Source of the DNA: Neoechinorhynchus agilis
Lineage: Eukaryota > Animalia > Acanthocephala
Assembly: GCA_051530055.1 (NCBI GenBank)
Contig: CM121341.1
Location: forward strand, 1 to 64,000
Length of the DNA stretch: 64,000 bases
Direction of reading: 5' to 3'
This document shows positions 62,411 through 63,954 of the stretch, piece after piece. Position numbers and translations under genes: made by a program. The notes below the pieces were generated by a model. The model saw only the letters and a list, made by a program, of their open reading frames with translations, made no database searches and had not been told where the DNA came from. Every line of letters begins with the position of its first letter. The first letter of the stretch is position 1.

Positions 62411-63907
62411 TTACTCTCCGCCACTGTGTAGGGTTTCTGTGAACGTGAAAGGCGGCGGTCGCCAGTGCATGGTTGAATTTTTCTTCAACTTTACAATTTT
62501 TAGGCCGAGACTGCGCGCACGGGACATTGCTGGGCATTCGAGAGACCCTTGTCGCCCGCATTTTAAGTAAAATTGATATCGCTCACTCATTGAATCTATA
62601 AATTCCTGATTAATTGGACCGGTTTGATTACGTAGCACTTGAGATTCATTGCTTAGAAAGAGGCGGTAGCGTGGATGAATATCCGGTCGTTGAAGACAAT
62701 TGAGGATAAATTCATGTCCCTCTTGTGCCGAAAACGCACATGCCCCAATATGGGGTGTAGGCACCTGATGCAGGTTTGCACGATCACTCGATTTACAAAT
62801 TCTTGAGGTAGATGTTTGAGTTGAGGTAGGTATCATTGTTGAGGTTGGAATATGAGTCGAAGCATGTCTGACTGTGTAAATTCCTGGGTTTAATGCATCG
62901 CCATTGCGCCGAGCGTCATTGTGCACAGTATTTGGAGAAAGGTGAGAAGATATAACATCTGTTTCATCGCTGCTTTCGGTAAAAACCTTTACTTCCTGCA
63001 GAACACAATCAATCGAATCGTCGACCGTTCGGCGTGTCTTCTTAGGCGAGTCTTGTAATAGGTTATCTCCTTGATTTGGTAGCCCTGACAGTCGTTTCCG
63101 AGAGATTATGTTGAACGCTTCTGAGGTGTAGCGGTTGTAATTGAGGCAATTTTCTGACTCCTCCGGTTTGCACGAAGATTTTAAGTCCCTATCTTTGGAA
63201 ACGGACTGGCAGTGTGTAACGTGAGAACGAATAGCTGGAAGTGTATCGTATTGAACAGCGTACGCTGGGCATTGAAAGGTGATCGAATTTGATTTGTGGA
63301 CGTTCTCCAAATGGCCTACAAGAGAGTTATAACGTCCTTTTCCAACGAGCGAAGGTTCGCATGCCGGACAAGGAGCTGGATCGTCTTCTCCTGATTTGTA
63401 TAAAATGATTGCGGATGGTGCCGGATTGACATTGGCATGAGGATTTGCAGAACTCAAAACCATGTTTCTGAATTTTTCCATTTGGATTGCTTTGCATCGT
63501 CGGAAATGTAGTCCAACACTCCGAGATTCGCGATGCCCGAATCTGTCACAAATGGGACATACCCAAATCACCTCCGCGTATTCATGGGCCCCATGTAGGT
63601 GTGCGAGTAGCAGCTTGAACTTGGACTGTCCAACACATCCGAGACTCCATACCGGGCAAAGAAGCATGTTGATTTGGTCGATCGGGTAATGAAGTCTTAT
63701 TGTTTTGCCTGTTGGATTATTGCTGCTCGGTCTTTGGCCGCACTCGGTTTTCGGTTGTTTGTTCATTTGATGATGTTGCTGTTGCTGTTGGTCCGAACGA
63801 TGAGCGTCATCTAAAGATGAGCGCTTAGCAACCGATGGACGCGGGGCCACTAATGACTCCGAATATTCGTCGATGATTTTCAGGGTAGATTTTTGTGAGG
63901 AAGTCAT
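62411..63907 (-). pseudogene. N-terminal ORF of R2 family 'a' (four zinc fingers), starting at the 28S-derived ATG
   Basis: ATG at 63907-63905; C-x6-C..H-x4-H, C-x2-C..H-x3-C, C-x2-C..H-x4-H, C-x2-(Y)..H-x3-C. Confidence 0.85.
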
Positions 63908-63954
63908 AGTTACGTCCACCGTTTACCCGCGCTTAAATTAATTTCTTCACTTTA

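What the first reader, a model, noticed from the sequence alone, without database searches (positions are those of the whole stretch)
63880..63935. R2-site elements with no 5'UTR: the ORF starts at the AUG inside 28S helix 69
Seen: GGG TAA ACG GTG GAC GTA ACT ATG AC.., where the ATG of the helix-69 loop (canonical position -15) is in frame with the element ORF in two unrelated N-termini. Family a reads MTSSQK… (ATG 63907, ~498 codons open). Family b reads MTSFIS…/MTFFIS… (ATG 47376, 59469, 28343). An in-frame rRNA TAA lies 5 codons upstream and coding sequence begins at the junction. Established: R2 is co-transcribed with rRNA, is uncapped, and usually has a 5'UTR with a ribozyme and unclear initiation. 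Inference: these elements borrow the start codon (and, in family c, the stop) from the rRNA target, so only a correctly placed rDNA insertion yields a translatable ORF. Two families in frame could still be chance.
Basis: partly seen in the sequence, partly recalled or inferred. Interest (0 to 1): 0.85.

Follow-up and report, generated by a model that had tools for sequence, protein, structure and literature searches.

The report
R2 retrotransposons opening at an rRNA AUG
In this thorny-headed worm's ribosomal DNA, R2 jumping genes have no 5' untranslated region: their protein-coding frame runs straight out of the host 28S rRNA and begins at an AUG that belongs to the rRNA, which bears on the unsolved question of where R2 translation starts.

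Summary
The window is a decayed rDNA region of the acanthocephalan Neoechinorhynchus agilis, or a very close relative. It holds several families of R2 retrotransposons at the canonical 28S site.

Evidence that the reading frame starts at the rRNA AUG:
- In four of five 5'-junction lineages (a, b, d, f) the frame runs without a stop from the helix-69 loop AUG (position -15) into the element.
- An in-frame 28S UAA lies 18 nt upstream of that AUG.
- The distance from the AUG to a conserved block differs among lineages (92, 95, 104, 119 nt) but is always 2 mod 3.
- A family-f copy in a genuine 28S gene elsewhere in the genome (L017) has 967 uninterrupted codons from this AUG, including the zinc-finger and R2 N-terminal regions.
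- A conventional R2 from a metagenome closes this frame after 10 codons.

All families carry a segment complementary to the 28S leader at -29 to -22, where the R2 ribozyme P1 stem usually lies. This argues that the RNA keeps the AUG. I could not fit a full HDV-like fold.

The "borrowed stop" of family c looks like a deletion in a dead copy. The N-termini are homologous, not unrelated. The leader travels with the RNA.

Use of the AUG is inferred, not shown. I rate this a new variant of a known kind.

The parts
63903..64000 (-). 28S rRNA fragment upstream of the R2 site, ending in helix 69. It holds the in-frame TAA (63925-63923) and the loop ATG (63907-63905).
   Evidence: Rfam LSU_rRNA_eukarya, E=1.9e-19, with the helix-69 alignment; sequence.
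59551..63907 (-). R2 copy 'a'. It is degenerate. The ORF from the rRNA ATG stays open for 498 codons (62414-63907) and carries zinc-finger motifs. After frameshifts come the RT (60391-61698) and the CCHC/RLE region (59697-60188). A 3' UTR of about 145 nt ends ...AATAAATGCGAATT|TAGCC.
   Evidence: ORF list; Pfam RVT_1; best PDB hits are R2 proteins, E=1.5e-45; 3' junction.
63797..63855 (-). Conserved 5' block of copy 'a': AGUCAUUAGU-GGCCCCG-CGUCCAUCG-G..AAGCGCUCAUCUUUAGAUGACGC. It is complementary to the 28S leader CGGUGGACG and to UAACUAUGACU. It also encodes the peptide L-V-A-P-R-P-S-V-A-K-R-S-S-L-D-D.
   Evidence: MFE fold pairs it with the leader; duplex -21.0 kcal/mol, p=0.005 against 1000 shuffles; RNAalifold consensus helix; alignments.
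47353..47804 (+). Copy 'b': a 28-nt 28S leader (47353-47380) plus an ORF from ATG 47376 that is open for 143 codons (MTSFISVKDKDS...). It is embedded in non-28S sequence X, so it is an R2 5' fragment, not a whole element.
59371..59492 (-). Copy b', 97% identical to b: a 28-nt leader (ATG 59469-59467, leader carries AAC->AAT... read as GTAACAATGAC) and an ORF open for 33 codons. A deletion relative to b follows.
24400..28358 (-). R2 copy 'd': a 20-nt leader starting ACGG (28358-28339), ATG 28343-28341, and N-terminus MTFFISNKDSQGPKE... open for 46 codons. Degenerate ZnF, RT (25543-26427) and RLE (24129-25322) regions follow. An LTR-element integrase interrupts the copy. The sequence upstream of it is not 28S.
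1..2303 (+). R2 copy 'c'; its 5' end lies outside the window. RT is at 145-1020. ORF 1017-2321 holds the CCHC/RLE region and runs 18 nt into 28S, to the TAA at 2319-2321. It has no 3' UTR.
   Evidence: comparison with the L001 relative.
2300..3477 (+). 28S rRNA from the R2 site to the 3' end, downstream flank of copy c.
   Evidence: Rfam, 923.7 bits.
44245..47293 (+). R2 copy a', about 79% identical to a and 5'-truncated. It ends ...AATAAATGCATGCC|TAGCC.
   Evidence: Self-BLAST; sequence.
47293..47352 (+). 28S positions +1 to +33 (TAGCCAAATGCC..GTGACG), followed by TTTTGAATC (the start of sequence X) and 19 nt of unknown origin (GAAAAAAACTTACAAACAC). The mirror copy lies at 59551-59493(-).

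Best explanation
These are lineage-A-like R2 non-LTR retrotransposons of an acanthocephalan. They sit at the canonical R2 site of 28S rDNA and have lost the usual 5' UTR. Their single ORF is fused in frame to the AUG in the helix-69 loop of 28S, 15 nt upstream of the R2 nick.

Proposed mechanism:
1. R2 is co-transcribed with the rRNA.
2. The RNA is processed about 13-15 nt upstream of that AUG. This is the usual -28 position of the R2 ribozyme P1 stem, and here it pairs with a conserved element segment, UCCRYCG, 50-90 nt downstream.
3. The uncapped RNA therefore begins with a short 28S leader, and its first AUG is the rRNA AUG.
4. Translation starts there, so the first two or three residues (Met-Thr-Ser/Phe) are rRNA-encoded.
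5. During insertion, the cDNA copy of the leader anneals to the upstream target. This regenerates the same junction and so preserves the frame.

Shown: R2 identity, the insertion site, ORF continuity, frame conservation, the upstream in-frame UAA, and leader complementarity.

Inferred: the position of the RNA 5' end, ribozyme activity, and initiation at this AUG.
For: R2 identity and site:
- The RT and C-terminal parts match solved R2 proteins best (E=1.5e-45 and 3e-26).
- The 3' junctions are at the canonical |TAGCCAAATGCC.
- The host is identified through N. agilis proteins and loci that share 93-96% identity with window repeats and 28S.

Frame:
- The frame from the rRNA ATG is the longest open frame in every 5' junction: 498, 143, 46, 33, 33 and 27 codons, against 0-26 codons in the other frames.
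- The distance from the ATG to the conserved AGAUG is 95, 119, 104 and 92 nt in a, b, d and f. All are 2 mod 3.
- Copies b and d differ by indels of 6 and 9 nt.
- L017 holds a family-f R2 with genuine 28S on both sides and 967 uninterrupted codons from this ATG. The other frames are open for 0 and 3 codons. The ORF includes the ZnF region and the region matching R2Tg residues 562-738.
- The 28S TAA, 18 nt upstream, closes the frame.

Contrast: in L004, a conventional R2 in canonical 28S, this frame closes after 10 codons (MTLLWAHPSP*) and a normal 5' UTR follows.

AUG retained in the RNA:
- The leader-to-element duplex is stronger than in shuffles for a, e, f and f-L017 (p=0.004-0.011).
- RNAalifold independently predicts the helix CGGUGGA:UCCRYCG, with 41 of 42 cells paired.
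- The helix lies at -29 to -22, the position where most R2 ribozymes place P1 (PMC3774820).
- Copies b, b', d and e carry 20-28 nt of leader in non-28S contexts.

Literature: the R2 start codon is unknown, and about 28 nt of rRNA is typically retained on the RNA (PMC13580325, PMC3774820).
Against: - No fully intact copy was seen. Every copy, including L017, carries frameshifts or deletions further downstream.
- Lineage e, present as two duplicated copies, is out of frame with the ATG by 1 nt. It is multiply frameshifted.
- No complete HDV-like fold could be fitted to a, b, d or f. No Rfam ribozyme matched. The canonical CCUCCUCGUGG motif is absent.
- The leader duplex is not significant for b and d (p=0.24-0.31). 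Whole-region folding z-scores are weak.
- The conserved block could owe its conservation to the peptide it encodes rather than to RNA pairing.
- In-frame AUGs also exist downstream: codon 17 in f-L017, 48 in a, 89 in b.
- The lineages share ancestry, so their frames are not independent trials.
- R2 proteins elsewhere are thought to initiate without a required AUG.
Confidence: 0.58

Rival explanations
1. Translation starts by the non-canonical, AUG-independent route assumed for other R2 elements, for example structure-driven initiation near the 5' end. The region is translated and therefore kept in frame, but the rRNA AUG is only a bystander that happens to lie in that frame.
For: Reviews state that R2 protein needs no methionine start and that its start is unknown (PMC13580325, PMC13188248). 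A structured 5' region exists here as well. In the predicted fold the AUG is buried in a helix.
Against: The frame is closed by a UAA only 18 nt upstream. Any start must therefore lie within a few codons of the AUG, which is the only AUG there. All in-frame lineages keep the AUG.
Confidence: 0.22
2. The first 50-110 nt are really an untranslated RNA element, a ribozyme or 5' RNA. The protein starts at a downstream in-frame AUG (codon 17 in f, 48 in a, 89 in b). The open frame upstream is a by-product.
For: The conserved block pairs with the 28S leader. Downstream in-frame AUGs exist. With a stop frequency of 0.04 per codon, 47 open codons have a chance probability of about 0.15.
Against: The spacing between ATG and block is kept at 2 mod 3 across lengths of 92-119 nt. 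The indels between b and d are multiples of 3. 88 open codons in b has a probability of about 0.03. The downstream AUGs are not conserved in position among families.
Confidence: 0.14
3. It is chance or a product of decay. The junctions are dead copies in an rDNA graveyard, and the in-frame ATG has no significance.
For: All window copies are degenerate. b and b', e and e2, and f and f2 are segmental duplicates. One lineage is out of frame. A probably 5'-truncated R2 from another organism is also in frame with the ATG (L018), which shows that chance in-frame junctions occur.
Against: 967 open codons from the ATG in L017 cannot be chance: 0.96^967 is below 1e-17. Four lineages with different spacer lengths keep the frame.
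Confidence: 0.05

Closest known systems
R2 retrotransposons with upstream (-28) ribozyme cleavage, e.g. silkmoth, horseshoe crab, zebra finch (Eickbush et al. 2013, PMC3774820)
   Same: Same 28S site. Co-transcription with the rRNA is implied. The 5' junctions are uniform. An element segment is complementary to 28S -28 to -22. The 28S leader is carried on the RNA and sometimes appears as extra leader copies at aberrant junctions.
   Different: The known elements have a 5' UTR that holds the HDV-like ribozyme, and stops separate the rRNA AUG from the ORF. In L004, for example, the AUG opens only a 10-codon uORF. Here there is no UTR, the pairing segment lies inside the coding sequence, and the ORF starts at the rRNA AUG. 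No full HDV-like fold was found.
Lineage A R2 proteins (R2Tg and other vertebrate R2s; PDB 9dou, 9nl2, 9nl3)
   Same: They are the best sequence matches for the RT and C-terminal CCHC/RLE regions. Several N-terminal zinc fingers are present.
   Different: The host phylum is Acanthocephala, which is absent from the 2026 R2 inventory by phylum (PMC13580325). The N-terminal 500 aa have no detectable sequence homologs outside the species.
NeSL-1 and spliced-leader-targeting elements, which rely on the host gene for expression signals
   Same: The element depends on sequence supplied by its target gene to be expressed.
   Different: Those elements exploit host promoters and trans-splicing. They do not use a start codon inside a structural rRNA helix.
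R9 of bdelloid rotifers, the R2-clade element known from the sister group
   Same: An R2-clade element in Syndermata rDNA.
   Different: R9 uses another 28S site and makes a 126-bp target duplication. The elements here use the canonical R2 site.

Membership tests
R2 non-LTR retrotransposon | Insertion at the conserved 28S site (bottom-strand nick AAGG|TAGCC) | tested here: met
   3' junctions ...|TAGCCAAATGCCTCGTCATCTAATTAG in the window (47293, 59551), L002 (three copies) and L017 (two copies). 5' flanks are 28S ending in helix 69.
R2 non-LTR retrotransposon | Single ORF with a reverse transcriptase related to R2 RTs | tested here: met
   Pfam RVT_1, E=2e-35. The top PDB hits are R2 proteins, E=1.5e-45 to 8e-26.
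R2 non-LTR retrotransposon | C-terminal CCHC motif and a restriction-like (PD-(D/E)XK) endonuclease | tested here: met
   Residues 186-419 of the copy-c ORF align to R2 proteins up to their C-termini, E=3e-26. CRHCTAP..C..H..C and KPDLIL..D..K motifs are visible.
R2 non-LTR retrotransposon | N-terminal zinc finger(s) plus a Myb DNA-binding domain | tested here: inconclusive
   Three or four C2H2/CCHC-like motifs are visible in a and in P0094. There is a weak CTCF zinc-finger hit. Myb was not identified. There are no Pfam or PDB hits for the N-terminus of a.
R2 non-LTR retrotransposon | 3' UTR that binds the R2 protein | tested here: inconclusive
   3' UTRs of about 145-190 nt ending AATAAA(N)n are present in a, a', the L001, L002 and L017 copies. 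None is present in copy c. Binding cannot be tested here.
HDV-like self-cleaving ribozyme at the R2 5' end | Nested double pseudoknot: P1 (about 7 bp, starting at the cleavage site), P3/L3 directly 5' of P1', P1.1, P2, and a catalytic C in J4/2 | tested here: inconclusive
   A P1-like helix (28S -29 to -22 paired with UCCRYCG, followed by GG) is conserved. My descriptor found no consistent P3/L3/P2 in a, b, d or f. It did find a plausible fold in the L004 control. No Rfam ribozyme matched at E<=10. The CCUCCUCGUGG motif is absent.
R2 elements with a 5' UTR (standard architecture) | An untranslated region with stop codons between the 28S junction and the ORF | tested here: not met
   There is no stop between the rRNA ATG and the ORF in a, b, d, f and f-L017. 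The comparator L004 has such a region.

The most novel reading that the evidence does not exclude
An R2 lineage has dispensed with its 5' UTR and uses an AUG inside a universally conserved rRNA helix (H69) as its own start codon. The sequence that pairs with the rRNA leader, and so defines the RNA 5' end, is embedded in the first 30 codons. The same AUG is retained on most R2 RNAs. It would then be a general uORF or start signal in R2 biology, and this lineage would be a natural system for settling how uncapped Pol I-derived R2 RNA is translated.
Probability: 0.45. Interest if true: 0.78.

Novelty: new variant of a known kind. Interest (0 to 1): 0.64.

Why it matters
Where and how the R2 protein starts translation has been an open question since 1999. 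Current work on R2-based gene insertion picks N-termini arbitrarily within about 250 residues (PMC13580325).

In this lineage the ORF is bounded on the upstream side by an rRNA stop codon and opens at the only available AUG, which is itself rRNA sequence. That gives a precise, falsifiable prediction: the protein begins Met-Thr-Ser/Phe, and expression depends on that AUG.

The finding also extends R2 at the canonical site to Acanthocephala. It shows that a leader-pairing RNA element can coexist with coding sequence. It also points to the short uORF that the same AUG opens in conventional R2 RNAs.

Tried and rejected
1. The 92-bp satellite (37975-40341, 43508-44002, 51261-54049) as an array of 28S R2 targets. 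Rejected: its sequence is unrelated.
2. The conserved 5' block as a captured copy of 28S +1 to +45. Rejected: the local alignment is not significant, p=0.15 or worse. The 10-nt antisense match UUAGAUGACG to CGUCAUCUAA is post hoc and I did not pursue it.
3. A full HDV-like ribozyme. A descriptor search, two Rfam E-value scans and a motif search gave no consistent fold.
4. Homologs of the 498-aa N-terminus. None in the 5.8-billion protein index, Pfam or PDB.
5. A metagenome scan for GGTGGACGTAACTATGAC, to obtain an uninserted acanthocephalan 28S. It gave five chance matches with no 28S flanking sequence.
6. Further comparator R2s from protein hits (L005, L011-L016). None had a full 5' junction.
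7. L018 (MTLL|MKEIV...) as a second in-frame example. It lacks the ZnF and Myb regions and is probably a 5'-truncated copy in frame by chance.
8. Family c using the rRNA stop by design. Rejected in favour of a deletion.
9. An uninserted N. agilis 28S was never obtained. The exact junction, between -10 and -4, rests on the helix-69 pairing argument.

Full report
**What the window is.** Rfam finds only fragments of eukaryotic 28S rRNA:
- 1985/2300-3477(+)
- three pieces at 14369-15256(-)
- 63837-64000(-)

Between them lie tandem-repeat spacers in a palindromic arrangement, satellites, several non-LTR elements and an LTR-element fragment. So the window is a decayed rDNA region, not a working array.

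The c-family ORF finds proteins of the acanthocephalan Neoechinorhynchus agilis. Loci fetched from that assembly, GCA_051530055.1, share 93-96% identity with the window's repeats and 28S. The source is therefore N. agilis or something very close to it.

The RT and C-terminal regions of the elements hit solved R2 proteins best. Lineage A comes first (9nl2, 9nl3, 9dou; E down to 1.5e-45) and R2Bm second. All 3' junctions are at the canonical |TAGCCAAATGCC. These are R2 elements at the R2 site.

**The observation.** On the minus strand at 63928-63903 the sequence is GGG TAA ACG GTG GAC GTA ACT ATG AC, preceded by authentic 28S. Rfam places AACUAUG in the helix-69 loop. The motif recurs at 47355(+) and 59490(-), and in a shorter form at 28358(-). 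No occurrence is expected by chance.

From each ATG, frame 0 is the longest open frame:
- a: 498 codons
- b: 143 codons
- b': 33 codons
- d: 46 codons
- Frame +1 closes immediately and frame +2 within 5-26 codons.

The TAA five codons upstream is in frame.

Two details need correcting. First, the Rfam alignment pairs GGACGU with ACUUCC as helix 69, and the changes relative to the canonical sequence preserve the pairing. So the bases after ATG are probably still rRNA, and the junction lies a few bases upstream of the nick. Met-Thr-Ser/Phe is then rRNA-encoded. Second, the N-termini of a and b/d are not unrelated, as described below.

**More junctions.** The N. agilis loci add two lineages. Lineage e is at L001:9541, with a duplicate in L003. 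Lineage f is at L001:12656, also with a duplicate in L003.

All lineages share a block about 50-110 nt after the ATG. It reads (C)AGUUA(C)-CCCC-N-UCCRYCG-GG...UUUAGAUGRCG and encodes S-x-V-x-P-x-P-[PS]-G-T-[KR]-[RA]...D.

The distance from the ATG to the AGAUG of the block is 95 nt in a, 119 in b, 104 in d and 92 in f. All are 2 mod 3. Copies b and d differ by indels of 6 and 9 nt. Lineage e is off by one base, but it changes frame at least twice more downstream and is clearly dead.

**The strongest evidence.** I searched 1.84 billion representative proteins with a profile of the RT regions and screened the N-termini of the hits. This turned up P0094 (KAL7669718.1, N. agilis). It is 967 aa long and starts MTFPKAIYNATELRKAMVISPPPGTRASSTSD, which is family f.

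Its locus, L017, has genuine 28S on both sides...GGGTAAACGGTGGACGTAACT|ATGACTTTCCC... upstream and ...GTGAC|TAGCCAAATGCC...TGCATGAATGG downstream. The ORF is a single uninterrupted 967-codon frame starting at the rRNA ATG. The other two frames are open for 0 and 3 codons. The frame contains the zinc-finger region and the segment that matches R2Tg residues 562-738. With a stop frequency of 0.04 per off-frame codon, this cannot be chance.

The copy is still defective. Its RT core is deleted and there is a frameshift before the endonuclease. I therefore saw no fully intact element.

**Contrast.** A conventional R2 on a metagenome contig (L004) sits in canonical 28S. There the same AUG opens only MTLLWAHPSP*, and a normal 5' UTR and ORF follow. 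So the acanthocephalan arrangement is not the general one.

A Logan contig (L018) reads ...GTAACT ATG ACT CTC TTA|ATG AAA... with 853 codons in frame. It lacks the zinc-finger and Myb regions and is most simply a 5'-truncated copy in frame by chance.

**Is the AUG on the RNA?** In most R2s the ribozyme cuts in the 28S, typically 28 nt upstream of the nick. P1 is formed by 28S -28 to -22, and the retained leader guides formation of the 5' junction (PMC3774820).

Here every lineage has UCCRYCG, which can pair with CGGUGGA at -29 to -22. The variable R and Y positions stay pair-compatible: U-A or U.G, and G-C or G.U. Just upstream, (CAU)AGUUA(C) can pair with GUAACU(AUG). Supporting results:
- MFE folds recover both helices in a, d, e, f and f-L017.
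- RNAalifold predicts the first helix, with 41 of 42 cells paired.
- Leader-to-element duplexes beat 1000 shuffles in a (p=0.005), e (0.011), f (0.004) and f-L017 (0.005).
- They do not beat shuffles in b (0.31) or d (0.24).
- The L004 control behaves like the significant cases (p=0.006).

Copies b, b', d and e also carry 20-28 nt of leader while lying in non-28S sequence. That is expected if the RNA template began upstream of the AUG.

Against this, I could not fit a complete HDV-like fold. No Rfam ribozyme matched. The canonical active-site motif is absent. The block's conservation could also be due to the peptide it encodes. The leader-pairing helix is supported; ribozyme identity is inconclusive.

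**Family c.** ORF 1017-2321 runs into 28S and stops at the TAA of CATCTAATTAG, with no 3' UTR. The closest relative in L001 ends ...AAEQSLAAFHVFMGRRRALRDQ*. It then has a 3' UTR of about 165 nt ending AATAAATGCAGCTT|TAGCC. The window copy reads TTCCATG-ATAAATGC. It looks like a deletion of about 190 nt, and it also has a frameshift at 1017-1020. The borrowed stop is not supported as a design.

**Mechanism and status.**
- Shown: R2 identity and site; an ORF continuous with and in phase with the helix-69 AUG in four of five lineages and over 967 codons in one; an in-frame UAA 18 nt upstream; a conserved complement to the leader.
- Inferred: processing at about -28 to -30, initiation at this AUG, and restoration of the frame through annealing of the leader cDNA.

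Reviews up to October 2026 state that the R2 start is unknown and needs no Met. I found no statement that the rRNA AUG serves as the start. Acanthocephala and Rotifera are absent from the phylum-level R2 inventory.

**Verdict.** This is a new variant of a known kind, and worth following up.

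Noticed in passing
window 2260-2325: R2 copy c has no 3' UTR. Its ORF reads 18 nt into 28S and ends at the rRNA TAA. The nearest relative (L001 1707-2790) has its own stop and a UTR of about 165 nt, so this is probably a deletion of about 190 nt.
   Followed up: yes
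window 47325-47352 and 59519-59493; L001 17161-16440(-); L003 16078(-), 518(-): A non-coding sequence X starts with TTTTGAATC exactly after 28S +33 (..TTAGTGACG|). It lies behind two different R2 subfamilies (a and a'). It may be a separate element specific for a 28S site near the R4 position, or a deleted pseudo-28S. R2 5' fragments with 28S leaders (b, d) are embedded in X at different points, as template-jump chimeras would be.
   Followed up: partly
window 47334-47352; L001 9507-9517: The 11-nt CT(T/A)ACAAACAC directly precedes the 28-nt 28S leader in both b and e. These elements differ after the ATG. The origin of this sequence is unknown.
   Followed up: partly
window 50800-51260(-); L001 ~8956(-); L003 ~7845(-): A tandem repeat of about 206 bp contains degenerate, uninserted copies of the 28S R2-target region (ACGAGTAAATGGCGGACGAAACTTTGACTATCTTAATGGTAAACGCGTCATGG). 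It is a satellite apparently derived from the target site.
   Followed up: no
window 2676-15169: A large palindrome. The 28S 3' part plus spacer tandem repeats (units of about 397 and about 130 bp) at 2676-6462 is mirrored at 15169-11363 with 92% identity.
   Followed up: no
window 16095-18796(+), 40601-43520(+), 49094-50297(-): Other non-LTR retrotransposons with an RT and a C-terminal restriction-like endonuclease (RRPDG...D...K motifs). They are not R2 and may belong to the NeSL/R4-like clades. One pair forms an inverted duplicate of 96% identity (40342-41515 against 50297-49094).
   Followed up: no
window 20606-25322 and 30456-34652: An LTR-retrotransposon integrase-like sequence is fused to the RLE region of R2 copy d. 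The whole block is duplicated in inverted orientation with 96-97% identity.
   Followed up: no
window 63814-63805(-), 47493-47502(+), 28241-28232(-): The conserved UUAGAUG(A/G)CG in the R2 5' block is complementary to 28S +14 to +23 (CGUCAUCUAA), just downstream of the insertion site. In b and d the difference is a G.U-compatible change. The match is not statistically convincing and was found post hoc.
   Followed up: partly
L004 4043-4075: In a conventional R2 in canonical 28S (JGI contig Ga0466692_067434), the helix-69 AUG opens a 10-codon uORF (MTLLWAHPSP*) ahead of the R2 ORF. An HDV-like candidate pairs GGCGGG with CCCGCC about 240 nt downstream.
   Followed up: partly
L018 1-40: A Logan contig (SRR30842538) holds an R2 copy whose 853-codon ORF is in frame with the canonical rRNA AUG (ATG ACT CTC TTA|ATG AAA). 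It lacks the ZnF and Myb regions and is probably 5'-truncated.
   Followed up: partly
window 34686-37975; 37975-40341, 43508-44002, 51261-54049: Two satellites, with periods of 454 bp and 92 bp, flank the R2 copies. The 454-bp repeat also occurs in L002.
   Followed up: no
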